Part shown: piece by piece, positions 3,718 to 36,600 of the stretch
Layout: each line of letters starts with the position of its first letter
Position numbering within the stretch: position 1 is the stretch's first letter
Assembly (NCBI GenBank): GCA_964199315.1
Contig: OZ116711.1
Location: 3,596,001-3,660,000, forward strand
Reading direction: 5' to 3'
DNA length: 64,000 nt
Source: Orbicella franksi
Lineage: Eukaryota
Program-made: the position numbers and the translations under genes
The notes under the pieces: model-generated
Database searches by the model: none
Told to the model about the DNA's origin: nothing
The model's input: only the letters and a program-made list of their open reading frames with translations

Positions 3718-5696
3718 TATCTGGTTGAGGATACCAGAATCCCGTGATATTGTCTGTTTATTTTGCCACAGACAGAACAAACTAAAATTATATATAGATC
3801 AGTTCCCGACTAGGAATTGCAAGTGCGATTCGTTTTATAGAAGCAAACATGTCCGTAATGGTCGGTGTACATTCACTTACCATAAATATTCTGCTGAAGC
3901 TGGGATAAAATCCGAGTCGGAAAATATCTGCACAAACTCTCAGTTCGTGCAAGAATGACTTCATATATTTCACCCAGTGTGAAAAATTAACGGATGTTGA
4001 TGGGACCAAGAAAAAGAAAACTCAGTTTGCATGTGAAGATGGCTGCGTCTGTTCATACAAATAGCAGTGGAATAAACTATTTAATCATGCTATGAAGAGT
4101 GAGCTGTACGTGATGTTATGATAAAATATCAGTTACATGTGTTGCCAAGTCAAGCTGAGAGTAAATCGTCGGCAGCCGGGAAAAACATTTCTTTCTTTCA
4201 TCTGGTTTGGCTTTATAACTCGTTTAAACAAATAAACGCTGTTTTGGCACCACATAAGTATGGAAGTGTTAGTTACCACGATGTAAAGAAATTTAAATTT
4301 CTGTTACTATATTGTTCTTCAGCCTGTTCAGTCTCTTTCCATGTACTTGCACGGTCCTTATATGGATACTTTACCTTCTGAATTAACAGTGATAAGCCGC
4401 TACAGGCAACTGATGTGGGAGTCTGGGCCTTTCAGTCCCTTATATGGAATTAATACTAAGTTCGGCCGTGAATCTATTAAAACATTACCCGTTTCTTTTT
4501 CTTCAGTTATTTTAAGTGGGTCAAGAAGTTAACGAGCTGATTGTTTCTGAAAGCTTGATTTATTGACTCCAAACCATGAATTCCAAGACGAATTATGGTG
4601 TAATTAAAAACAAATTAGAATAAGCTTCCTGTTGATCTTGGCCTCAAGCACAATGAGAGGTTAAGCACGTCAACATGTTTTTCGTTTCGCGAGTCTAAGA
4701 ATATTTCAGTTGTTAAAATGGAGATTTCTTTACGTATTTCAAACGCAAAAGGGAGAGAGCTCTTCTTTTAACTAGTGACTTACAGAACTAATATGACAAT
4801 AAATTAGCGATAAGAGAGGCCTCGAAAGAAGACGAGGAAAGATGAAGATGGGAAATGTCGAGAATGTATGTCCAGCTGGTTTTATTTATTTATTTAATAT
4901 GGTTTGAAATCAATAACTTCCTTTGGATTTAGGTCTGATCTCAAATTCTTAGCTTGGGCTCGAACGCACTCACATGAACAAAGGAAGGCGAGTTGAGAAT
5001 GCGAAGCTCGTAAGCAACACAGAAACACAAGATGGGTTACGAAGAGTTATCAAAACGTATTTTATCCATACACTGTCAGTTCATTGTACACTAAACAGGT
5101 GATAAGAATAAAAAAAATCATCAACTAAGGAATGTTATTTTGATATTTGCGTTGATTTTCTTTTTCTTGCTTTTTAACATGTCCAAACCACAGTGATTTA
5201 TATCATTTTTTTGCTTGATATAGCATCATCTGCACATCTTGTCATTCTTGTGTCAGTAGTTCTAAGATGTAGTGCAAAAGCAATAACATTCTGTGAATTG
5301 CCTTTTCAGGCACTTTCTACTTTCTTGCATCCAGTCGTCTTTGAAAAACATCAAGAAATCGTTCATATTTTACTTTTTAACTGCAAGGAATCTCTCAAAC
5401 ACAGAAACGTCACGTCTCTCACCACCTAGTGGTAGTGCTAAGCAGTTCTTTCGCACCAACGTTGTGACTGTCATGGTACTACATCTACCAAAACTTTCGA
5501 CAATCACCTCGAATCGGTTGACTGTTGACTGTCACGGAGCTGTTGATTGACAGGTAAATGTTGCCACTAAGCTCGTGATTAGCTGTCACGGAACCGTGCG
5601 AAGTTGTTGACTGTCACGTTCAAGAGAGTAGTAATGAATTTCCGTGTTGACTATAACATAGACGTCTCTGAAAGTCACGAAATTCTTTGCCTCCTG

Positions 5697-6278
5697 TCAT
5701 GAAACCGTTGACTCTAGTGAACAAAGACTGTCAACACTGCCACTAACGCTTGGGATCTTTGAGTATGTGGCTCGTCTATTCCAATAATTCAGTTCTCTGA
5801 AGGACAATACCAATGCTAGCATGGTCAAAATCGCTGTAGCTGCGAAAAGTCCCCCCAATATGACCAGATAACCGTTACGCTGGAAAATCCTCCGACTCGT
5901 GACTAGAGTGGCATGATTACATTCCTTTCCACTACACTCTTGTACGCAGCGTTTGGCGTTACACGTGAACGAGCATGCTCCAGATAGACAGTGCTGTCCA
6001 CAATAACCGACGTCACTTGTACATTCCATATGGCAGTTATGACATCTTTGGTAACAAGTCCCGGATGTGCACGTCATTTTCTTACATTTGAAGCCATCGC
6101 AGGCCTGGTTACAGGTAGCGTATTGTGAGTCTCCGTACGTAACGCCACACTTGCATGACACGTCACTGCACTGCTGAAAGCAAGTGTTTGATACTGTGAC
6201 GTTGCAGTTTTCTGTTGATGACGCGTCAACGACGGCAGCCAGAAGAAATTCCGTGATAATCACAATGAAGCAAAGCAT
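5697..6278 (-). CDS. Cys-rich (CxQxC 4-Cys repeat) type I membrane protein, paralog 1, 193 aa
   Basis: Signal peptide MLCFIVIITEFLLAAVVDA, 20 regularly spaced Cys, TM YLVILGGLFAATAILTMLALVLSF, 34-aa tail. Intact ORF conserved in three paralogs. Splice acceptor tcttcacag 8 nt upstream of the ATG. Confidence 0.88.
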   Translation of the reverse strand: MLCFIVIITEFLLAAVVDASSTENCNVTVSNTCFQQCSDVSCKCGVTYGDSQYATCNQACDGFKCKKMTCTSGTCYQRCHNCHMECTSDVGYCGQHCLSGACSFTCNAKRCVQECSGKECNHATLVTSRRIFQRNGYLVILGGLFAATAILTMLALVLSFRELNYWNRRATYSKIPSVSGSVDSLCSLESTVS

Positions 6279-13150: not shown

Positions 13151-14319
13151 TTTAAGCAGGTCAAGAAGTTAACGAGCTGATTGTTTCTGAAAGCTTGATT
13201 TATTGACTTCAAACCATGAATTCCAAGACGAATTATGGTATAATAAAAACAAATTAAAATAAGTTTCATGTTGATCTTCGCCTCAAGTGCAATGAGAGGT
13301 TAAGCACGTCCACATTTTTTTTCTTTTCGCCAGTCTAAGACTATTTCAGTTGTTCAAGTGGAGATTTTTTCATATATATGATCGGAAATCCAAACTTAAA
13401 TTACTAGTGACTGACGAAACTAATATCACAATAAATTTGTGATAAGACTGAAAAACCTCGAAAGAAGACGTGGAAAGATGAAGATGGGAAATGTCGAGAA
13501 TGCATATCCAGCTGTTTTTATTCATTTAATCAATATGGTTTGAAATCAGTAACTTCCTTTGTACTTAAGTCTGATCTCAAATTCTTGGCTCGGGCTCTAA
13601 CGCACCCACCTGAACAAAGGAAGGCGAGATTAGAATGCGAAGCTCGTAAGCAACACAGGAACACAAGATGGGTTACGAGGAGTTATCAACACGTATTTCT
13701 CCATACTCTGTTAGTTCATTGTACACTAAACAGGTGATGAGAATGCAAAAATCATCAACCAAGGAATGTTATTTCGATATTAGCGCTGATTTTATTTTTC
13801 TTGCTTTTTAACATTTCCAAAACCCAGTGATATATATTATTGCCGTTCTTGTCTCAGAAGTTCTTGCCATTCTTGTCATTCATTATCTCAAAAGTACAGA
13901 AGCAATAATTGTGTATTGCCTTTTCAGGCACTGTCTACTTTCTTGTATTCAGTCGTCTTTGAAAAACATCAAGAAATCGTTGATATGCGACATTTTAACT
14001 GCAAGGAATCTCTCTAACACAGAAACGTCACGTCTCTAACTACCTTGTGGTAATGCTAAGCAGTTCTTTCTCACTAACACTTTGACTGTCATGGTACTAC
14101 ATCTACCAAAACTTTCGACAGTCACCTCGAAACGGTTGACTGTTGACTGTCACGGAGCTGTTGATTGACAGGTAAATGTTGAGTATCACCAAGCTCATGA
14201 TTAGCTGTCACGGAACAGTACGAAGTTGTTGACTGTCACGTTCAAGAGAGTAGTAATGAATTTCCGTGGACTATAACCTAGAGGATTTTGAAAGCAGTCA
14301 CGAAATTCTTTGCCTCCTG

Positions 14320-14901
14320 TCATGAAACTGCCGACTCTAGTGAACAAAGACTGTCAACACTGCCACTAACGCTTGGGATCTTTGAGTATGTGGCTCGTCT
14401 ATTCCAATAATTCAGTTCTCTGAAGGACAATACCAATGCTAGCATGGTCAAAATCGCTGTAGCTGCGAAAAGTCCCACCAATATGACCAGATAACCGTTA
14501 CGCTGGAAAATGCTCCGACACGTGACTGGAGTCGCTTGGTTGCATTCCTTTCCGTTACACTCTTTCACACAGCGTTTGGCGTTACACGTGAACGAGCATG
14601 CTCCAGAAAGACACTGCTGCCTACAATAACCGACGTCGCTAGTACACTCCATGTGGCAGTTATGACATCTTTGGTAACAAGTCCCGGATGTGCACGTCAT
14701 TTTCTTACATTTTGAGCCATCGCAGGCCTGGTTACAGGTAGCGTATTGTGAGTCTCCGTACGTAACGCCACACTTGCATGACACGTCACTGCACTGCTGA
14801 AAACAAGTGTTTGATACTGTGACGTTGCAGTTTTCTGTTGATGACGCGTCAACTACAGCAGCCAGAAGAAATTCTGTGATAATCACAATGAAGCAAAGCA
14901 T
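14320..14901 (-). CDS. Cys-rich type I membrane protein, paralog 2, 193 aa
   Basis: 11 aa differences from paralog 1 and all 20 repeat Cys retained. Acceptor ctctttacag lies 8 nt before ATG 14901, so the ORF-track extension MYLFTDTK is largely intronic. Confidence 0.88.
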   Translation of the reverse strand: MLCFIVIITEFLLAAVVDASSTENCNVTVSNTCFQQCSDVSCKCGVTYGDSQYATCNQACDGSKCKKMTCTSGTCYQRCHNCHMECTSDVGYCRQQCLSGACSFTCNAKRCVKECNGKECNQATPVTCRSIFQRNGYLVILVGLFAATAILTMLALVLSFRELNYWNRRATYSKIPSVSGSVDSLCSLESAVS

Positions 14902-24956: not shown

Positions 24957-25133
24957 CTTTGTTCCCTCCACGGGGAACTACACAAGAGTCTTGTGTGAGT
25001 AGGCTGTGTTCCCTCTCGTACTACACTATTGAATACCCTGTGTTCCCTCTTGTACTACTCTAATGGATGCCCTGCGTTCCCTTTTGTACTGCACTATTGG
25101 GTTCCCTGTGCTCCCGCATGTTCTACACAATTG
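24957..25133. repeat. 34-bp tandem repeat (4 units from 25004) plus left arm of an inverted repeat pairing with 25927-25991
   Basis: Units start ctgtgttccc-like at 25004, 25038, 25072 and 25106. The reverse complement of 24957-25021 matches 25927-25991. Confidence 0.85.
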
Positions 25134-25704
25134 TTGACTTCGTCAGAAAAATTCTGACACTGCCGCCAAGATTACGAGTTACAAGGGGAGCAGGTCTTCG
25201 TCTTCTTCTTCTGAATCCCATCTGACTACAAGACAAAGCCAGAGCTAGACAAGTCAAAACGGTAGTGGCTGCGAACAATCCCGCTAAAATAACCAAGTAG
25301 AGGCGCGGTATAAAAGGTTCCTTGTGGTCTGAGGGCAAGTGTTTACACGTCTTCCCATCACACTCTTGTACACATCGTTTGGCGCTGCACTTAAACGAGC
25401 ATGCTCCGGACAAACACTGCTGATTGCAATAATCGACGTCACTGGTGCATTCCATCTGGCAGTCATGACACTTTTGATGACAAGTCCCGGATGAGCACGT
25501 GATCTCCTTGCACTTGTTACGTTCGCAAGTTTGGCTACATTCAGTGTAAACATAATCTCTGTCACTTGATGAACATTTACATGAAGTGCTGTTACACTGT
25601 TGAAAGCACGTGTTTGATAATATCGAGTTGCATTTTTCGGTCGGCGATGACTGGACGGTCAAGGCGAGTTGGAAAACAGCTGAAACCAAGATGATCCTTA
25701 GCAT
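25123..25704 (-). CDS. Cys-rich type I membrane protein, paralog 3, 193 aa
   Basis: Signal peptide, the same 20-Cys scaffold, TM LYLVILAGLFAATTVLTCLALALSC and juxtamembrane RRRRRR. Acceptor tttctccag 8 nt before the ATG. Confidence 0.88.
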   Translation of the reverse strand: MLRIILVSAVFQLALTVQSSPTEKCNSILSNTCFQQCNSTSCKCSSSDRDYVYTECSQTCERNKCKEITCSSGTCHQKCHDCQMECTSDVDYCNQQCLSGACSFKCSAKRCVQECDGKTCKHLPSDHKEPFIPRLYLVILAGLFAATTVLTCLALALSCSQMGFRRRRRRPAPLVTRNLGGSVRIFLTKSTIV

Positions 25705-27339: not shown

Positions 27340-29700
27340 TTTAAATATCATTGTTGATAGTGACAATGCAATGCGGTGTGAGGCACGGCATTCTTTTCGC
27401 GCTCAATCTTCTCTCTCGGGTAATACCGTCTTTGCAGAGTTTGTATCGACTGTAGTTGAACTCGAGATTGACAAAGACATGCACGCAGACTTCCGTGACT
27501 GAGAATGGTGCAAAGTTTAACCTCGTCACGGGGAAACTACCTGATCGCACGCTGGCGTAAAACATGTTTAGGAAATGCTCACATTACCCCATTGAGTAAA
27601 ACACAAGTCGCGAACTCTTATCATTCTCTTGAAACCTAACACGCAAAGACGAACATGTAAAAGACACCTCATAACTGTTGTTCTTATAGGGAAAACACAC
27701 CATTTTTTTCGAGTAATTCGAAGCACACAATTTCGTCGCTCGTGCACCTTGATGCTAAAGGTAACAGCATCGAAACAGCACCTTCCGATTTGAATTTTGA
27801 GAGCCTGTGAAATCTCACTGTAGCTATCAGACCTTTGACTATTGTTCGTAATTGTTCGGTTTTCATTTTTTAGAGACAATGCGTCTTTTGTTGGGAGCCA
27901 TATTGGAAATATTACGTGTTTAAAGTTAGGAGCGATTAAACATACTTGCTGGGCCATCCCAAAACTGGATAAATCGACAAACAGAACATTTACCTTGATT
28001 TGAATAAATTCCTCCGGCTCTAACGGTCTATTGAGTCAAGTTCAGGCTGACATATGTACACTTGTTTGTACAAAAGAGCTGTGAACAATGGCCTTTGTGA
28101 GGATTAATAAGCCGGCCGGGGGCTTGGCATCTGTCTGTCATATGTCTCTTCCAAACAAACCGCATACAACGTTCATTGTCTTTGTCAAAAATCGATGGAA
28201 AGTTCGAAAAAGGTTGTTTTGAAGTGAGAGAAATTCCACATCTACGATTTTTCCATCGAGTTGGTGTACTTTTCTTGAGATGGGCAGTTCGCCAGAATTT
28301 TCGTGGCCAGCTCCTTTGATACCGGGTCACGGCTTCTAGTTACCATGGTTTTAACGTAATTTCAAAAACATGCACGGTTTGGGGGTCCAAAGATCAAAAA
28401 AAAAAAAAGAAAGAAAGAAAGAAAGAAAGAAACTTTGACCGAAAGCTCTAACCGAACCAGAAAGGGTCTATTTCTCGATAAAGTACGCCAATTCTGGAAT
28501 AACGAATAAAACATATTGTCATCGATGACTTTAAAAATAAAGTACAAAAAACAAAGGGAAGTTTCAGTTTCAATGGGCATTCCAGAATTTTTGGAATTTT
28601 TTTCGCACATTCATAAAGGCAGAACAAATATCATACTGCTTGTTAGTCTACAACAGATGAAAGGATTACTTTTTTAAACCAGAAAAGAAAGGGGTTTTAA
28701 AGTTTTAAAATCCTCAGTGGCATCCACAAATTATATTAAAACATGATTGTTCCCGGCTGCTGAAGGATACCGGTGACCTTTAATTTCCTTCCTTTGCTCG
28801 GACATTTCCTCGAATATTAACGACTCTGTTCTCTGATTAATTCTAAACACTTTCCCCACGCACGTTTATAAAGTATTGTCGTTGGCATCGTCGTTGAGGA
28901 AGAGAAATTCACGTGATAAAGGATTTCTTGCAGACACTGTCTTGACTTCAACGAGCCCCAATAAATTTGAGAATTTACAAAATACATTCCCGAATTATTG
29001 AAATTTTTCGCAAAATCGTCTAAAAGCAAACAGCACCGCATAAAAATCTTGATCAATGGCAACTGTTTGAAAGATCAAACTTCAAGATGCATAAAACCAC
29101 CGCATCAACCCGGTGTTTCTCTGAAAATAAAGAGTTCCGTTTGCATTGCGTTTTGCATTACCTTCAAACCGAGAGAAACCCGCACAATCACGGTCGTTTA
29201 CTTCAGTATGAAGAAACAAACAGAAGATTAGGGAAGATACCTGAAAATTTTTGGCAAATATTTTAATCTTTTGGGGGGCGTTGTAACGTCTGGACCGTGA
29301 AAACTCTTCAACCGGAAATAACCTCATCAGAAACCGTACATCGTTCAAACAAAACCAGAATCTTTTAAGATGTTCTTTCTGTATTGAAATTGCACGTGAT
29401 TACACACTTGGTTCTAGCATAGCAAAATTGCCAAGACTTACCGATGGGTGCAACGCACAGCTCCAGATAGATCAAGTGATTTTCACCTGAACTTGATCAC
29501 GAAGGCTAAGATCTGTTGTTTCTTCCAAGTGCTTGTAAGATTGAACTCCTTTACCTTGGTGAAGAAGTATGTCGGTGGAGATGCCAGTTAAGATATCTCT
29601 TTGATGGTTTCCAGAAAGGTTTTTGACGGACTGCCAGAAGGTCCAGAAGCGTCAAATGATCATACAATTGTCAAAGCACGTACAAACAAAGTTCGCTGAC
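27340..29700 (-). pseudogene. Decayed LRR gene remnant upstream of paralog 3
   Basis: Fragments VKNLSGNH (~29610), KSLDLSG (~29470), RLKYLPKIFRYLP (~29230-29270), LKFDLSN (~29070), RVVNIRGN (~28810), VEFLSLQNNLFRT (~28200-28240), and LRRCT-like WKRHMTDRCQAPGRL (ORF 28028-28330). Confidence 0.42.
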
Positions 29701-30499
29701 CCGTTTCGTGAAAGAGGTCAGACTGTGCTGTTTACAGTACGTGAAAATTCTATCGGTTTTTTCTCTCTGTCGAAAGCTCAGTTAATTCAGTTTACCAACT
29801 TTAGATACGACCGAGAAATACCCAGACGTTTTTTAAATAAACCTTCCTTCAAGACGTTGTACTCAACAAATCAAAGAAGAATGGCATCAAACTGTTGACA
29901 GATTCGAGAAGAAAAGAAAGATAAGCTTTTCAGTCACGTGAATTTGAAATTTCCTCGTGATCTGCAAATGTTCTCTCAAAAAATGGCGGGACAAGTCACG
30001 CGTGACGGAAACTAACCAATCAGAACTAATCACGTTCAGAGTCGTACCCAGTCTTCGTTTTTCAACGGAGAGGGCGGCGGTGAAGTAGACTTCTCAGCCG
30101 AAATCAAAAACGAATATATTGTTAGACATTTTGTTATTGTTGCATATTTTCACGAGTAGCCCAACTGACGGGCAGAAAGAAACACCGACCAATAGAGATT
30201 CGACGGTTTCTTTTCCAATATCCAGTCTTTAAAGCTTTTTGGCACTTTTGTATCAAGCCGTTTTCTCAGAGTACAAATATCGTGAGACATTTGCAGCTAT
30301 CTGTACTCGCTTCACACGTTACCTGCGGATTTTGTCTTATGCTGAACCAAGAAAGGATGATCATCTTCAGCTGAGCATACTAACACGGTCAACAATTTTC
30401 TTGTACTCGAAGTATTTTCGAAAAGGCTTTACTATTTAAGGGGCCCGCTGAACTCTTCCGCGCAAGTGTGGCGAGTTGAATATTAGACCGTCGTTCCAA

Positions 30500-30587
30500 T
30501 AGCCTGCAGAACAGGCGGATTAGCGTGTGTCGCGTTTCGCTCTAGCGTTTCGCTATCTGCCCCGCTAATCCGCCTGTTCTGCAGACT
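30500..30587. mobile_element. 88-bp MITE, TAG...CTA ends, 26-bp TIR, perfect 9-bp TSD
   Basis: TIR tag(c/t)ctgcagaacaggcggattagcg. TSD tcgttccaa at 30491-30499 and 30588-30596. Confidence 0.92.
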
Positions 30588-32113
30588 ATCGTTCCAATTT
30601 CCAAAGTTGGGCTCGGTGACGGAGGATAATCCTTCTCCCACCGAGATCAATCTTGTGGGACCTGCCGTGAAAGTTATCGTAACTATATTCTAGAGGATAT
30701 TTGTCATTTGTGGAGTGTTTTCACAGCATTGTTTTTTTGTGAGTGTCGTAGAGAAATCTGACGTTCCGGCGGGAAGTGTACAAAGCGGCTTGTTCCACAC
30801 GAAGGGTCGAATGCGGGAAGAAAGTTGCAAATTATCTCGGACAGCCATGGTAAGGGGTCATTCGTGAGCTTCCAGTGTCAATAAAATGCGCAATATATAT
30901 CAGCTTATATCGTGACACAAACCTCCTTATGGCAAGTCACGTACTCCTCCCCAGGGACCGCTAATCGCGACACAGGGAAAATATTTTACGTAAGCATAGT
31001 TCGGCTTTAGGGAGACGAAAAGGGCCTATTTCATCGGATCTTGTTGAATTCAAAACCGAAGTAAACTTACCCGACGAAGCAACTAATTTGATAATTTTAT
31101 TTTTTTAAACCTTTAACACCACTCTCTCGACTTTTCTGCGTCCAAAAGTTATAGCTTCTGTTTCTTTGGACTGGGTCAGAAGTCCTGAGTATTAACCATT
31201 TGGTAATTCTCCCCATTTTCATATCAGCAGGTCGAGGTTGCATTGTCATTTTATTTTTTCTCAGATTTATATCTCAAATTACTTTTCTAATTTTATCATT
31301 TTAATACTTTATTTACAAAATCTCCCATGTTGTTAGATTCTAGCTAATTTTTCAGATACAAAAGGGATGAAATCTTTGAAGGTTTAATATTGAAATCCTT
31401 GGCCTTATGTTTTCTCTTAAACTAATTGGCTAATATGAGTTGTTAGTATGGTTGTACCAAATAATATAGTCTATATAAACTTTAATATGATAGATCACAA
31501 ATTAATTTTCTTCTAATAAGTCTTAAACTGAACCATGCAGCGTAGCCTTAAAGGAGCTCAGGCACAGCATTCTGAGTTATTTTAGCCGCGTACAAAATTA
31601 CCTTTAAATCGAAGGACACCTGAAAATAGTAGTTTACTAAGAATGAAAAGCACTAAAAAAATATTAATAAAACATAAAGGAACAATTATAGCTACGGTTG
31701 GAGAAGATTAACGCGGATTACAAGCGACGAACTTGAAAAAATTAGGCTGAACTTTTCAAGAAGTGCAAACCGTGACGTAACACCTCTATAACTACCAGCA
31801 TTACACTCACCCTTTTATGCCTCAAGCTATGACGCTAAAATCTTAGGAATTTTATCGCCATATTCTTAATATTGGGGTAGTGTAATATTTTCTTATATTT
31901 ATTTGAGTTGTATATCTACTATTCTCTACTTGGTTTTTTCCCAGCGTTTGTGGGTGAAGCATTTATGTATTTTTACTGATATTTATATTTAAATATTTTT
32001 AACATATTTTATTTTTAATTGATATTTACTTACATTAGTTCTTTTCAATGTTTCGTTATTTTACTCTACTTATTGTCAAGCGTTTTATACATCAGCTTCA
32101 CACGAGCCTCCAG

Positions 32114-32201
32114 CAACCTTGATCCCAGTTTCTCTCTCCTTTGCGTCCCTTGTCGAAATCAGGCAAAGGAGAGAGAAACAGAGAGTCTGGGATCAAGGTT
32201 G
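32114..32201. mobile_element. 88-bp MITE, CAACC...GGTTG ends, eroded 9-bp TSD
   Basis: 15-bp TIR caaccttgatcccag. Flanks agcctccag / agcctctgg (7/9). Confidence 0.8.
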
Positions 32202-32314
32202 AGCCTCTGGCTCGGATCTGGAGGGCAACCTCAGCCCACGTTTTGACACTAATAGATTGATGATTTATTGATTGATTGATTGTCTCTTTGATCTTTATCA
32301 CTACATCATGTTCT

Positions 32315-33603
32315 CTATGAGCTTAAGAGCCTTACACAAGCGATCAGAACAGCTAACGTCTCACTTTGCAGAACTGATGCTTTACTCTGTGAACGCCCGA
32401 TGTAATTACATCTTCCTTTGAAACATTGTCTTTTACAATGCTTTGCTTGACACTTCATCTCACATCTACCCCCAAGACACATCTGATCGCACCTCTCCAC
32501 TCCACTGGTACACTCCATAGTACAGTTTGCGCAGACCTGGTGACAAATAGCCGATGAGCACGTGATCTGAACACATTTGGCTCTCCATACACATGACTGT
32601 GAGCAGAACTGACTAGACGAACATTCCATGTTACAGTGACCGAAAAAGCACTTCTGCGAACAACCATGTCTCCCTAACGAAACAGAAGAAATACATGTTA
32701 GTTATGGCAAAGGGTTCGCCTCAAGGACTAGCAGGTGGATCAAGTGATTCTGCCATTTCCCATCAACCCCTTTTCGCTGAAAAATAACTGGAAAAGTCAA
32801 GAGAGCCCAAAATTCCGTTAAAATATGGACCAAAAACTGCTCCACCTTTACCCAATTATACCTTTCCCGAACAAGAAAGGTCCTTCTTCACTTCTCAACC
32901 CTCTTCCCCCCGCCCCCTACCCCCTCTTAAGATTCGCCACGCAATACACTGATTTACTTTAGACCTCTGGAATCTAGCCTCGGGATTTCTTATATGCAAG
33001 AGAGGTGGGGGAGGGGAGGGTAAGCTTTCCCATCTGAAACGCTATTAGGTAGCATCCAGTGAACAGGGTCTGAATACCAGTAGCACCTTGGGGAAGGGTG
33101 CTCGTACGCGAATTAGATCTTGAGCTCGAATTACTAAATACTGAGGGTATCCCTCTTTACATAGAAAAATACTTTTACTGCTGGCAGCCGGTTTTTTCTC
33201 TAAAGGTCATTTAGACGAGTGTTTAGCCATCGCGAACGCAAAAAGGCGGTGTGGCCGTGGCCAATTAGGGATCAGAAGGCGAGAAAAGCGCGGTACGGCA
33301 GAGGAGGGAAGAAGACTAGACAAGGATGGTAAAGCCTCATAACCCCTGCTGAATTTCGAGAGGGACTGTCAACAGTCTAAAAACATCCGGCTTACCAGAA
33401 CAAATCATTTTAGGACAAGAAGAGAAGAAATGGCACTTTTGTGCGCAGCTGGTGAAGGGGGAAATATCAGTCATATCACACGAGCAACTGGTCAAGTTAC
33501 ATGTCTTTTGACAGAGATGTTGATTGATGTTTCCTCCTTTGCATTTTTCATCCGCTTGTGATACTGTCATAAACAGAGCCACTCCTATCACCACTGCTAT
33601 CAT
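32315..33603 (-). CDS. Cys-rich surface protein, paralog 4: join(33603..33396,32673..32315), 188 aa, 28 Cys, GPI-like C-terminus
   Basis: Donor TCT G|GTAAGC at 33396/33395 and acceptor ttcgttag|GG AGA CAT at 32674/32673. The phase-1 join keeps the Cys repeat in register (…MICSGRHGCSQKC…). AATAAA on the minus strand at 32264-32269. Confidence 0.78.
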
Positions 33604-36600
33604 GCTTTGTAGTAAAACCCTGTAATTGTAAACATATACTCAGATTTAAACATAGTAGCAGTTTACTTAGGCATAGAAAAAAATAGTAATAATGGAAAAC
33701 CGTCAAGTTCCACGACAAATTAAAGGCCAAAACAAAATCTAGACCATTTCCTCTACATCCGTGTTCATTCAAAAACGCTTGTGGTTTTTGTGTTTGAAAT
33801 GATCCCAAATTTTCGTGAAACAGACATCGGATTACGAGCTATATACTTAAAAATTTATTTTTGAATGATATTAGAACAATGGGGGGTTGACAAGGTTTAC
33901 ACAGAGAACGAAAAAATGCCCTTTTCTGTTTTTAGCTTCTTGGAGTTTCGCCGCGCGCAAAGGCTGGCAAAAGAAGCACTACTGTACTCTAAGGTTTACA
34001 TGAAACACAAAGCCATAAGGTTGGGTTTACATAAACGACTTCAACTGCGCTGATGGGTGATGTTTTTCTCTATCAGGTGGCATGTCAGTACAACAGACAT
34101 TAAATTTTATACCTCATGCTGATTCGTTGTGCCAACAATAAAGCGAAGAACGTTCTAGCAATACACACTGTTTTCAATCTGTGGACTGCAAGTAAGGTCT
34201 AATAACATTTACTGTTTTCGCAGCAAGTCCTTATTTTTTTACAACTCTGATATGGTAACCACGAATCAGAAGGAATGTTGGTCAAATATTTAATCATGTA
34301 GCATTTGAAAATACTGAAATTAGGAATAATATATTGAAAAAATCAATTTGGATTAATTTACTGCACCTACTGTAAAGAGAAAGAACTTCAAAAACGAGCG
34401 GTATCAGCAAGCTAAGTCGTGGGGTCAAAACATTATTGAACACCTACAGAGGATGTAGTACCTCTGTGATAATTATATATCCATAAGTCATTCGGCCAAA
34501 GAAGTGCCCTTCGATTCCCGCTGTTTATCGAGACCCTCTCTTTTTGATCTTTAATAATTTACAATTTATGGAGTTTCATTGCAGAGGGATCTTAAGGATA
34601 AAATAATAGTAAATAATGGAAAATTAATGATGGGATATGATGTCTAAAACGAAAAGCTAACTTACACCACAAATCGGAACCGGGGTCCGGCGTCTGCTGT
34701 TAGGATCATAAAATAAACAATGAAACAAAAACACACACATACTCATTAGCGTTACTGGAAGTTAACGTTGAAAAACACCCACGTGAATGGGCGAGCGTTA
34801 TGACTTTTTCCTACTCACGCAGAAAGCATACAAGTTAAGATACATTTCGCTTTTTCTCTCCGCTTTTAAATTTTAATGTACAATAATTTAGTTGTAGGGA
34901 AGTCAATTTTTCCCCAGGTAAAAAAATCGCACGAAAACAAAATTGATAATTTACTGCCGAATCTGCAGAGTATTAAAGTAGTGTATGTAAATATTCAAAA
35001 GAAGCATAACATTCTTAAATGTCTTTAGGTTAAAACTAAAAATACTCATAATACTCTTATAAGCCTATAAGTTTGACATTTGGTTGTAACTGACTTTACT
35101 TTATAAGATCAGTTTAAAATAATTACTCAAACAGAGTGGCTTAAAAACTTACTTGTTCAAACGTTGATTGGTGCTTTTTTCGCTTCTTGTTTTCTTTTCC
35201 CACCGAAATTATTTTGATTTCACTCTTCGGCGATATAGAAGCTCATTTCGACATGTATGCCAGCGGCGGTCGCGCCCCAATATCTTGTTACTCCTGAAAA
35301 ACACGGAACTTTAAATTTGTAGGTAGTGCGTTTCCTGAAAATTCAATTAGTATACATATACCTCGCGACCAACATGCATTATACGTACGATTAATTATTT
35401 AAACTGAACTTTCGTCAAAACGTCGAGAAAAACTCTATGATATAGCTTATTCGTTTTGTATGTTATCTGTTATTGGTGTTAGAATCCTTGTGGCTTAATC
35501 AATGCATCGTACTCGACAAATGTACTTGTCCGACTTCATGTTTTCGTGACCTATTACAAACGCTTGCCGTTTCACACTGGGTTAATCGAGATTGGGAGAC
35601 TTCACTGGGCTCTTGTTTACAGTTCCGAGGTGAAATGTCTTTGTTCAAAATTTTAGTAACAAGGTGAAAGATGATAATTATGTAAATTTACTGATTTCCT
35701 CGAAAGCCCAAGGTCAAACCGATTGTAAAAATACTAGAGCCAATCACAATAGGGTGAAAATTTTCCATGTCAAAGACAGGATTATTAATTTCTGTCGTTA
35801 CACATATTCACCGACAATATCAAAGATGGCACGAAAAATTTTAAAAATTAGAAAACGTTTTGGAATATTTTCAATGCACCAAAGAATGTCGACGTCACAT
35901 GCTCCTTACATTAAAGTAACCCGGCAACGGAGTCTCCAAACAAATTCCATTCCTTTTTTTTCAAGATACTTGCCAGCAGCTTGTTACATCGATCACTTAT
36001 GGAAAATTACTTTTTGTTATCTGTTGTATTTATCTGTCTCTTCGACTTATCTTTAGTGAGTTGAGGTATGTACATGGCCTGACCAAGAAAAATCTGGAAC
36101 ATGATAAGGGTTGCGTTTTTGTGTAAAGTTAATTGGTTATAAACTGCCGGGAATTTGGAGAAAAACTACTTGAAAACTTAAAGTGATAAATTAGGACATG
36201 GCTTTTAACATAGTGTTGAGGAAATGGAATGGTTTCTCAGAGTCAGTCATGGACTACTTCAAGACATGGGCTCCTTGGTTCAAGATGATGAGATCTACTG
36301 CTAAAACGGTGTTTGTAAGCTTAGTCAACCCCCAGTGCTGTTAATAAAGAGACTGAGGGGTCGCAAAGCCACTGCGCCGAGCAAGTAATATTTGAAAAAA
36401 TATTTGCTTCTGCCTTAGTGCTCAGGTCTCCACTCCCTTAATTACACGCACGGTCCTTTTCAATCTCGCGTGGAAAGTAAGCAAGCTACTTGGGATTAGT
36501 CTGTCCTTTCCGTCCATTTGTGTTAAAAGCGTAGGCCAGGGAATTGTATGTTCTGGACCGTACAGTCAGTTCCGCGCCTTTTTATTAGTCCGTCAAGCGA

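What the first reader, a model, noticed from the sequence alone, without database searches (positions are those of the whole stretch)
32315..33603. Fourth paralog is hidden by an intron, has two extra repeats and appears GPI-anchored rather than transmembrane
Seen: the ORF track shows two unrelated pieces. Joining donor 33396 to acceptor 32673 gives a 188-aa protein with 28 Cys, exactly 8 more than paralogs 1-3, so the repeat count changes in whole 4-Cys units (7 versus 5). It ends ...SQSKASVLQSETLAVLIACVRLLSS*, a small-residue site, spacer and short hydrophobic tail with no cytoplasmic part, and AATAAA lies ~45 nt downstream. Inference: a GPI-anchored or secreted member beside three signalling-competent members, the receptor/decoy arrangement known from other surface receptor clusters. 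Caveat: TGT|GTAAGG at ~32335 could be a second donor leading to a TM exon.
Basis: partly seen in the sequence, partly recalled or inferred. Interest (0 to 1): 0.7.

Follow-up and report, generated by a model that had tools for sequence, protein, structure and literature searches.

The report
Coral lipid-anchored cysteine-rich surface protein gene
This is a real two-exon coral gene for a small cysteine-rich surface protein that probably sits on the cell by a lipid (GPI) anchor; it is an old, conserved gene already in public annotation, and its membrane-spanning neighbours, not it, look like the derived form.

Summary
Joining 33396 to 32673 on the minus strand (GT-AG, phase 1, 722-nt intron) gives 188 aa. 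It has 29 Cys: 28 in the mature part and 1 in the tail. The three single-exon 193-aa paralogs have 20 core Cys. AATAAA lies 45 nt after the stop.

RefSeq already has the same 188-aa model for Orbicella faveolata, misnamed "keratin-associated protein 5-5-like". In Pocillopora, spliced cDNA contigs laid on genomic DNA show the intron at the same place and phase. There the last exon runs unspliced through the stop and 3'UTR, so the "second donor" caveat gets no support.

The C-terminus is conserved in kind across Orbicella, Oculina, Pocillopora, Montipora and Acropora. It has a small-residue site (S-K-A/T), a 7-residue spacer and a 13-residue hydrophobic end. It evolves as fast as a signal peptide, which fits a cleaved GPI signal. 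This was judged by rule only; no trained predictor was available.

The 28-Cys, GPI-like form is the widespread one in this cnidarian family. The TM forms are one clade that lacks two coils and the intron. The order GPI-type then TM-types is conserved between Orbicella and Pocillopora. A "decoy" role is unsupported. Pfam has no family for it, and the predicted fold is a beta-solenoid. The scan had not found this before on other DNA.

The parts
33396..33603 (-). Coding exon 1 (208 nt, ATG at 33603-33601). It encodes residues 1-69 plus the first base of Gly70. It includes a predicted signal peptide (about residues 1-17, 33603-33553) and the N-terminal Cys cap.
   Evidence: The donor is TTCTG|GTAAGC. 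RefSeq O. faveolata protein P0001 begins and joins identically. An RNA contig of run X1 lies on 33395-33543 and then leaves the genome. The signal peptide is by inspection only.
32674..33395 (-). Phase-1 GT-AG intron, 722 nt. It lies inside the 41-aa block that the TM paralogs lack and contains a dispersed repeat at about 33163-33343.
   Evidence: Pocillopora has an intron at the same place and phase (395 nt), shown by laying cDNA L012 on genomic L014. In X1 the contig depth is lower in the intron than in exon 2.
32315..32673 (-). Coding exon 2, encoding residues 70-188 and the stop TAG (32317-32315).
   Evidence: An X1 RNA contig of 467 nt lies on 32228-32674, and its last 20 letters then leave the genome. 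The break is at the acceptor, within 1 nt because of a shared G.
32585..32673 (-). The exon-2 part of the two-unit (41 aa, 8 Cys) block that the TM paralogs lack. The block is residues 59-99; its exon-1 part is 33396-33429.
   Evidence: Alignments.
32318..32386 (-). GPI-attachment-like C-terminal signal. The candidate omega site is S166 (32386-32384), followed by K-A, a 7-aa spacer (S169-T175) and a 13-aa hydrophobic end (L176-S188, 32356-32318). No residue follows the hydrophobic stretch.
   Evidence: Rule-based scan across 9 orthologues. Identity to the orthologues is 65-79% in the ectodomain but only 10-35% in the spacer and tail. No trained GPI predictor could be run.
32264..32269 (-). AATAAA polyadenylation signal, 45 nt after the stop.
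   Evidence: The X1 exon-2 contig starts at 32228.
32333..32338 (-). It is probably not used.
   Evidence: Present in the sequence. No joint from here was seen, though coverage was thin. The motif is absent from the Pocillopora cDNA, whose last exon is collinear with the genome through the stop and about 290 nt of 3'UTR.
33619..33621 (-). Likely acceptor (…ttacaattacag|G) of a 5'UTR intron, 16 nt upstream of the ATG. The 5'UTR exon itself was not located.
   Evidence: Sequence. This rests on analogy with Pocillopora, where a 78-nt 5'UTR exon is spliced on just before the start codon. Inferred, not shown for this genome.
25123..25704 (-). Paralog 3 (context). It is a single-exon 193-aa type I membrane protein with 20 core Cys, a conserved TM helix and a poly-Arg tail ending KSTIV.
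14320..14901 (-). Paralog 2 (context). It is a single-exon 193-aa TM type, 94% identical to paralog 1 over the columns kept for the tree.
5697..6278 (-). Paralog 1 (context). It is a single-exon 193-aa TM type.

Best explanation
The stretch is a genuine gene with two coding exons. It is the orthologue, in an Orbicella-type coral, of a gene conserved across stony corals.

Its 188-aa product enters the secretory pathway through an N-terminal signal peptide. It folds into a disulfide-braced all-beta rod, predicted to be a beta-solenoid: a 5-Cys cap, five four-Cys coils and a 3-Cys cap. It ends in a GPI-attachment signal.

The GPI transamidase would cut near S166, remove the last ~22 residues and attach the protein to the outer leaflet of the plasma membrane, leaving no cytoplasmic part.

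It heads a conserved same-strand cluster. The downstream genes encode the same kind of ectodomain, two coils shorter, on a strongly conserved TM helix with a cytoplasmic tail of roughly 35-40 aa. The GPI-like, 28-Cys, intron-bearing form is the older architecture. The TM genes most likely arose once, through an in-register loss of two coils together with the intron and through extension of the terminal hydrophobic stretch into a full TM helix plus tail.

Shown: the gene model, the conservation, the synteny and the clade structure. Inferred: GPI processing, the beta-solenoid fold and the direction of change. The ligand and biological role are unknown. My guess is a surface binding or adhesion protein that acts without direct cytoplasmic contact.
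For: Gene model:
- The splice sites and reading frame fit.
- RefSeq O. faveolata has an identical 188-aa model, 97% identical over exon 2.
- Two X1 RNA contigs break exactly at the two junctions, and exon depth exceeds intron depth.
- Fourteen RNA runs hold 0.28-0.52 of the words of a stretch that is about 40% exon.

Orthologous intron with cDNA proof:
- Pocillopora cDNA contigs L010-L013 laid on genomic L014 show the same site and phase. The last exon is collinear through the stop and 3'UTR.
- Genomic ORF fragments P0243 and P0248 break at the same Gly.

GPI-like end:
- All 9 orthologues carry S-K-A/T 22 residues from the end (24 in P0006), a 6-8-aa spacer and a 12-13-aa (16 in P0006) hydrophobic terminus.
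- The tail is 10-35% identical where the ectodomain is 65-79% identical.
- By contrast, the TM block of the TM type has 68% mean pairwise identity.
- Deep family branches and other members in this genome (L006, L008) end the same way, after Ser/Thr-rich stalks.

Polarity:
- The TM type is one clade (SH-aLRT 100). The p4 clade (support 96) includes Montipora. Every non-TM row of about full length (at least 190 aa) has 28 or more Cys, except P0100 (22).
- p4-type proteins also exist in Acropora.

Synteny:
- In Pocillopora contig L016 the order is p4-type, then par3-type, then par1-type, all on one strand, as in the window.
- Fused public gene models in P. meandrina and A. muricata also imply that the two genes are adjacent.

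Fold:
- The AlphaFold2 model has pLDDT 79.5 and is all-beta.
- Its best structural neighbours are beta-solenoids at Z about 9.
- The nearest predicted-structure clusters are unnamed cnidarian ones.
Against: - No trained GPI predictor and no experiment were available.
- The hydrophobic end is short (13 aa) and in this species contains an Arg.
- One orthologue (P0006) ends in a polar hexapeptide.
- The last structural Cys is only 8 residues before the proposed omega site, a short linker for the transamidase.
- Two poly-A raw-read runs showed no reads on the gene in the 12% of each run that was read, so expression is low there.
- Some RNA runs also hold intron sequence, from pre-mRNA or DNA carry-over.
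- No explicit junction-spanning joint was listed for this species.
- The tree is unrooted. If the root lies on the TM stem, the direction of change is undetermined.
- The beta-solenoid matches do not stand above the background usual for repeat proteins.
Confidence: 0.62

Rival explanations
1. The protein is secreted or otherwise soluble. The short hydrophobic C-terminus is not recognised by the GPI transamidase, so the protein is released. Alternatively it is held in the ER and degraded.
For: The hydrophobic end is only 13 aa, with an Arg inside it in this species. P0006 ends in polar residues. The linker between the last Cys and the proposed omega site is short.
Against: A terminal hydrophobic stretch of the same length and position persists in five coral genera and in deep family branches, although its sequence is free to change. 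That argues for a selected function of the GPI-signal type rather than a meaningless tail.
Confidence: 0.18
2. The protein is a type I membrane protein held by a very short C-terminal TM segment with no cytoplasmic tail. On this view it is a truncated remnant of the paralogs' TM helix that remains uncleaved.
For: The tail aligns with the first part of the paralogs' TM helix. The model predicts a helix at residues 172-187.
Against: The mean Kyte-Doolittle score of the best 19-residue window is 1.1-2.0, against 2.1-3.5 in the TM paralogs. Only 13 apolar-type residues is too short to span a bilayer. The tail evolves like a removed peptide.
Confidence: 0.08
3. A minor transcript uses the donor at 32335, or reads through into the next gene, and so links the p4 ectodomain to a TM-bearing product.
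For: GTAAGG is present at 32335. A RefSeq model in Acropora muricata (P0272, 436 aa) joins a p4-type protein, two residues before its stop, to the complete downstream TM-type protein.
Against: No such joint was seen. The donor is not conserved. The Pocillopora cDNAs end at a poly-A signal after an unspliced last exon. RefSeq models in Orbicella, Oculina, Pocillopora, Montipora and Acropora millepora all stop at the same place. The fused product would carry the second gene's signal peptide internally, which looks like an annotation or read-through artefact.
Confidence: 0.07
4. Functional reading: the GPI form is a decoy that competes with the TM paralogs for one ligand, as TRAIL-R3 does for TRAIL-R1/2.
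For: It is lipid-anchored and has no tail, it sits beside TM paralogs of the same fold, and the adjacency is conserved between coral genera.
Against: The ectodomains share only 36-39% identity and differ by two coils. The lineages are old and separate. There is no TNFR or other receptor signature. The GPI-like state seems ancestral, so it was not derived to blunt a signal. No ligand is known.
Confidence: 0.08

Closest known systems
RefSeq models named 'keratin-associated protein 5-5-like / 5-1-like / 9-1-like' in Orbicella faveolata, Pocillopora damicornis and verrucosa, Montipora capricornis and foliosa, and Acropora millepora
   Same: These are orthologues. They have 188-197 aa, the same 28-Cys layout, the same C-terminal type and the same exon join.
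   Different: The name is a composition artefact. There is no Pfam keratin-B2 match. The proteins have a signal peptide and a GPI-like end, and they are cnidarian. Nothing has been published on them that I could find.
GPI-anchored / transmembrane paralog pairs of surface receptors (TRAIL-R3 vs TRAIL-R1/2, Fc-gamma-RIIIB vs IIIA, GFR-alpha with RET); from general knowledge
   Same: One gene family yields both lipid-anchored and TM forms, and the GPI signal is homologous to the start of the TM helix.
   Different: Here the GPI-like form appears to be the older one and the TM form derived. The ectodomains are only about 37% identical and differ by two coils. The fold is unrelated, and no signalling domain is present.
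Disulfide-braced beta-solenoids such as insect antifreeze proteins, and bacterial beta-helical adhesins or curli (structural analogy)
   Same: The model is a regular all-beta repeat rod with Cys at fixed positions in each coil. The best structural neighbours are CsgA, HpmA, the ryegrass ice-binding protein and Bacteroides adhesins, at Z 9.1-9.4.
   Different: There is no sequence relation and Foldseek finds nothing below E 0.001. Z about 9 is ordinary for repeat models. The coil is about 19-20 aa with four Cys, unlike the 12-aa one-disulfide coil of the beetle antifreeze protein (the latter from memory).
TNF-receptor Cys-rich domains (UniRef names the fused Pocillopora meandrina model 'TNFR-Cys domain-containing protein')
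   Same: Both are Cys-rich extracellular repeats on a type I membrane protein.
   Different: There is no Pfam TNFR_c6 hit at E up to 1 for that protein, nor at E up to 10 for the window's proteins. The predicted fold is a solenoid, not a ladder of CRDs.

Membership tests
GPI-anchored proteins | N-terminal signal peptide for ER entry | tested here: met
   A hydrophobic N-terminus is followed by S-Q-A|D, and the model makes residues 2-20 a helix. This is by inspection only; no SignalP run.
GPI-anchored proteins | Omega site: small residues at omega and omega+2, about 20-30 residues from the C-terminus | tested here: met
   S166-K-A, 22 residues from the end in this protein; the triplet is S-K-A/T in all 9 orthologues, 22 residues from the end in 8 of them and 24 in P0006. 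Rule-based.
GPI-anchored proteins | Polar spacer of about 5-10 residues, then a hydrophobic stretch that runs to the very C-terminus with no cytoplasmic residues | tested here: met
   The spacer is 7 aa and the tail 13 aa, followed directly by the stop. The tail is at the short end of the usual range and contains one Arg.
GPI-anchored proteins | Positive call by a trained predictor (NetGPI, PredGPI, big-PI) | not testable with these tools
GPI-anchored proteins | Release by PI-PLC, or a lipid moiety on the mature protein | not testable with these tools
   This needs an experiment.
Keratin-associated proteins (the RefSeq name) | Match to the Pfam keratin high-sulfur B2 families; intracellular hair-matrix protein of mammals | tested here: not met
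   No Pfam family at E up to 10 or up to 1. The protein has a signal peptide and belongs to a cnidarian lineage.
TNF receptor superfamily (basis of the decoy analogy) | TNFR_c6 Cys-rich domains | tested here: not met
   No Pfam hit for the window's proteins, for P0001 or for the fused P0255. No PDB sequence relative.
Cnidarian Cys-rich solenoid family (unnamed; defined here by profile A1) | Significant match to the profile built from coral homologues; the invariant Cys/Q framework | tested here: met
   There are 23 invariant columns, including 18 Cys. A search of 1.84 billion representatives gave 164 hits at E<=1e-3. The nearest Atlas clusters are cnidarian.
Beta-solenoid fold | Stacked coils of short strands, with structural matches clearly above background | tested here: inconclusive
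   The model is all-beta with pLDDT 79.5. The top 25 VIA rows are almost all solenoids, but Z of 8-9.4 is within the usual background, and Foldseek E is above 0.4. Coordinates could not be inspected.

The most novel reading that the evidence does not exclude
The conserved cluster would be a two-component surface system specific to anthozoans. In it, a GPI-anchored long solenoid (this gene) captures a ligand or partner in the outer leaflet and hands it to the shorter TM solenoids. Their unusually conserved TM helix and their YxxPhi or PDZ-ligand-like tails would then couple to sorting or signalling. This would be a co-receptor arrangement of the GFR-alpha/RET or CD14/TLR4 type, built on a disulfide-braced beta-solenoid fold that I do not know from any animal receptor.
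Probability: 0.1. Interest if true: 0.7.

Novelty: new variant of a known kind. Interest (0 to 1): 0.38.

Why it matters
For annotation: several public coral gene sets call this family "keratin-associated protein-like". At least two models fuse the GPI-type gene to its TM neighbour (P. meandrina CAH3116747.1 and A. muricata XP_067026586.1). The correct picture is a separate, conserved two-coding-exon gene.

For biology: corals have an unnamed family of disulfide-rich surface proteins, so far seen mainly in cnidarians, in lipid-anchored and membrane-spanning forms. The two forms have stayed neighbours at least since Orbicella and Pocillopora diverged. Such families are candidates for cell-cell, cell-symbiont or cell-microbe recognition, which is poorly understood in corals. 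The case also shows a TM receptor-like form arising from a GPI-type ancestor by in-register loss of repeat coils together with an intron.

It is not a surprise at the level of principle. GPI/TM paralog pairs are common, and no function is known here.

Tried and rejected
- Pfam on all pieces and on relatives gave nothing.
- A PDB sequence search with the family profile gave nothing.
- Foldseek against PDB gave no match below E 0.4.
- Rfam on 29000-34500 gave nothing.
- tblastn with the TM-plus-tail parts of the paralogs against the whole window found no relic TM or tail exon on the minus strand between p4 and paralog 3. A lost or hidden TM exon is therefore rejected.
- An exact 23-nt pattern across the predicted exon junction found nothing in JGI metagenome contigs. 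This says little.
- Raw reads of two 2026 poly-A runs had no reads on the gene, so they could not show the junction.
- I tried an intron-only word search as a control for RNA runs. It was not clean: some RNA runs hold intron words, and only six RNA rows are shown.
- Two literature searches for the RefSeq name in corals found no relevant paper.
- Earlier notes of the scan held nothing on this family.
- P0005 (Oculina) could not be located on a contig.
- I did not run complex prediction, because I do not claim that the GPI and TM forms bind each other.
- I did not look up the window's exact spliced 188-aa protein in the contig index, because that would have meant typing a long sequence.

Full report
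**1. What is in the sequence**

On the minus strand the mechanical ORF list shows two pieces, 33337-33603 (88 aa) and 32315-32629 (104 aa).

- Exon 1 runs from the ATG at 33603 to 33396 and ends TTCTG|GTAAGC.
- After a pyrimidine-rich tract...TTTCGTTAG|GGAGAC opens exon 2 at 32673.
- The join is in frame (208 + 359 nt, phase 1) and gives 188 aa ending at TAG 32317-32315.
- AATAAA lies at 32269-32264, 45 nt after the stop.

The protein has 29 Cys, 28 in the mature part and one in the C-terminal hydrophobic stretch.

The three paralogs in the window are single ORFs of 193 aa, at 5697-6278, 14320-14901 and 25123-25704, all on the minus strand. Each has 20 Cys in the ectodomain core, a strong TM helix and a tail of roughly 35-40 aa.

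The eight additional Cys of the fourth gene lie in one contiguous 41-aa block, residues 59-99. That is two ~20-aa four-Cys units, in register. The intron sits inside that block.

A fifth TM-type paralog lies just outside the window.

**2. Is the gene model real?**

The database search returned a RefSeq protein of Orbicella faveolata of exactly 188 aa. It has the same N-terminus, the same join and the same end, and it is 97% identical over exon 2. It is named "keratin-associated protein 5-5-like".

Evidence from RNA assemblies of Orbicella-type samples:

- A 467-nt contig lies on 32228-32674, and its last 20 letters then leave the genome.
- A 151-nt contig lies on 33395-33543, and two letters leave the genome.
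- Both break at the predicted junctions. The one-base overhang is explained by a G shared between exon and intron ends.
- Exon 2 has depth 12.9, against 1.6-4.8 in the non-repeat part of the intron.

Weaknesses of this evidence:

- Another RNA run has unspliced contigs over both junctions, and several RNA runs hold intron words. Pre-mRNA or DNA carry-over is therefore present.
- Two poly-A raw-read runs had no reads on the gene in the 12% that was read, so expression there is low.

The clearest proof comes from the orthologue in Pocillopora (P0007, identical or nearly so to RefSeq proteins of P. damicornis and P. verrucosa).

- Four transcript contigs share one 3' end, 12 nt after an AATAAA.
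- They align to a genomic scaffold in three blocks: a 5'UTR exon, coding exon 1 and a last exon.
- The coding intron (395 nt, GT-AG) is at the same Gly codon and in the same phase as in the window.
- The last exon is collinear with the genome through the stop and about 290 nt of 3'UTR.
- Genomic ORF fragments in the same protein cluster break at the same residue.

The GTAAGG at 32335 is not conserved, and nothing splices out of the end of the coding region in the species where transcripts could be read.

One RefSeq model in Acropora muricata does fuse a p4-type protein, two residues before its stop, to the complete downstream TM-type protein. I read that as a read-through or annotation artefact. 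I keep a minor conjoined transcript as a low-probability rival.

**3. The C-terminus**

Orthologues from Orbicella, two unnamed close relatives, Oculina, Pocillopora, Montipora and Acropora all end in the same way:

- a short linker after the last structural Cys;
- a small-residue triplet, S-K-A/T (N-A-S in Montipora);
- a 6-8-residue spacer that often contains xLQ;
- a hydrophobic stretch of about 12-13 residues, followed within 0-6 residues by the stop.

Against the window's protein, the ectodomain is 65-79% identical in these orthologues. The spacer and tail are only 10-35% identical, which is like the N-terminal signal peptide at 28-72%.

The TM block of the TM-type relatives behaves differently. 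Its mean pairwise identity is 68% across proteins that are only 45-90% identical overall.

A segment kept for its physical character and position but not its sequence, at the extreme C-terminus of a protein with a signal peptide, is what a cleaved GPI-attachment signal looks like. The best 19-residue hydrophobicity window is 1.1-2.0, against 2.1-3.5 in the TM paralogs. Thirteen residues cannot span a bilayer.

I could not run a trained GPI predictor, so this remains a rule-based inference. The short tail, the Arg inside it in this species, and the 8-residue distance from the last Cys to the proposed omega site are real weaknesses. I put GPI anchoring at about 0.6.

**4. What family, and which form came first?**

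- Pfam has no family for any member.
- No PDB chain is related by sequence.
- A profile of 35 coral sequences searched against 1.84 billion representative proteins found only 164 hits at E<=1e-3.
- The nearest predicted-structure clusters are unnamed and cnidarian.

The AlphaFold2 model has pLDDT 79.5, above 90 in the core, and is all-beta. Its structural neighbours are almost all beta-solenoids: curli CsgA, HpmA, a plant ice-binding protein and Bacteroides adhesins. They score Z 8-9.4, which is not above the usual background for repeat models. I therefore treat the solenoid as likely, not shown.

Most family members outside the TM group end in a short terminal hydrophobic stretch, usually after a Ser/Thr/Pro-rich stalk. 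This includes 500-aa multi-repeat proteins and other members in this same genome.

In a maximum-likelihood tree of 55 members:

- The TM type is one clade, with SH-aLRT 100 and a long stem.
- The window's TM paralogs fall into three different old subclades. Only paralogs 1 and 2 are recent duplicates.
- The fourth gene sits in a clade (support 96) with Oculina, Pocillopora and Montipora proteins.
- Every non-TM row of about full length (at least 190 aa) has at least 28 Cys, except P0100 with 22.

Unless the root lies exactly on the TM stem, the simplest history is as follows. The GPI-like, 28-Cys, intron-bearing form is ancestral. The TM lineage arose once, by in-register loss of two coils that took the intron with it, and by extension of the terminal hydrophobic stretch into a TM helix plus tail.

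The gene is not a late decoy derivative.

**5. The cluster**

In a 1.13-Mb Pocillopora-type contig the order is p4-type, then par3-type about 6 kb downstream, then par1-type about 7 kb further, all on one strand. This matches the window. Fused public gene models in P. meandrina and A. muricata also imply adjacency of the p4-type and the par3-type gene.

The arrangement therefore predates the divergence of these coral lineages.

Motifs in the cytoplasmic tails of the TM paralogs, among 54 TM-type sequences with tails of 33-44 aa by the counting used:

- 25 carry YxxPhi;
- 24 end in [ST]x[VIL], a PDZ-ligand-like end that is almost universal in the par3 subclade.

No known signalling domain is present, so "signalling-competent" is unproven.

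A decoy relation is unsupported. The ectodomains share 36-39% identity, differ by two coils, and have been separate for a very long time. A co-receptor relation is possible but untested.

**6. Verdict**

The finding is a correct piece of gene-finding on a gene that public pipelines already model, under a misleading name. Its GPI reading is plausible and gains support from conservation.

The family itself is uncharacterised and of moderate interest. It is a cnidarian group of disulfide-rich, probably solenoid, surface proteins in lipid-anchored and TM forms, held in a conserved cluster. Function is unknown.

Noticed in passing
window 31534-31895: A dispersed repeat between the fourth gene and paralog 3. 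In RNA assemblies it reaches summed contig depths of about 12,000 (X1) and about 1,100 (X3), with many loose ends, so many copies elsewhere are transcribed. Rfam has no match.
   Followed up: partly
window 33163-33343 (inside the intron): A second repeat with RNA-contig depth of about 70-120, far above the gene's own exons. It is probably a transposable-element fragment expressed from other loci.
   Followed up: no
window 32114-32201: Nested inverted repeats (22-nt arms, 91% complementary) form a hairpin about 60-150 nt beyond the poly-A signal. It looks like a MITE.
   Followed up: no
window 5697-6278 and 14320-14901: Paralogs 1 and 2 are 94% identical (over the columns kept for the tree) and lie 8623 nt apart. 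Neighbouring ORFs are also duplicated (for example 5193-5429 and 13827-14039). This is a recent segmental tandem duplication.
   Followed up: partly
G000:C14:3593911-3594414 (L004:1459-2022, minus strand): A fifth family member, TM type, 187 aa, lies just outside the window. It belongs to a third old TM subclade.
   Followed up: yes
P0255 (P. meandrina CAH3116747.1) and P0272 (A. muricata XP_067026586.1): These public gene models fuse the GPI-type gene with the downstream TM-type gene. UniRef labels the first 'TNFR-Cys domain-containing protein', although Pfam finds no TNFR domain. The 90% clustering lumps both gene types because of such fusions.
   Followed up: yes
TM paralogs, e.g. window 25123-25704: The TM helix (YLVILAGLFAATT.L.CLAL.LS) is conserved at 68% mean pairwise identity across the whole TM clade, more than much of the ectodomain. 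This hints at a partner within the membrane. The par3 subclade ends almost universally in a KSxxV-type PDZ-ligand-like motif after a poly-Arg run.
   Followed up: partly
L006, L008, L009 (G000 contigs C4 and C3): Other members of the same Cys-rich family lie elsewhere in this genome, some with 66-83 Cys in ORFs of 417-535 aa. L006 and L008 end in GPI-like tails after Ser/Thr-rich stalks.
   Followed up: partly
L017:920-5121: An intact-looking gag-pol retrotransposon (RVT_1, RNase H, integrase) lies upstream of the TM-type gene in an Acropora-type contig. The GPI-type gene was not found within the 10 kb fetched upstream of that gene.
   Followed up: no
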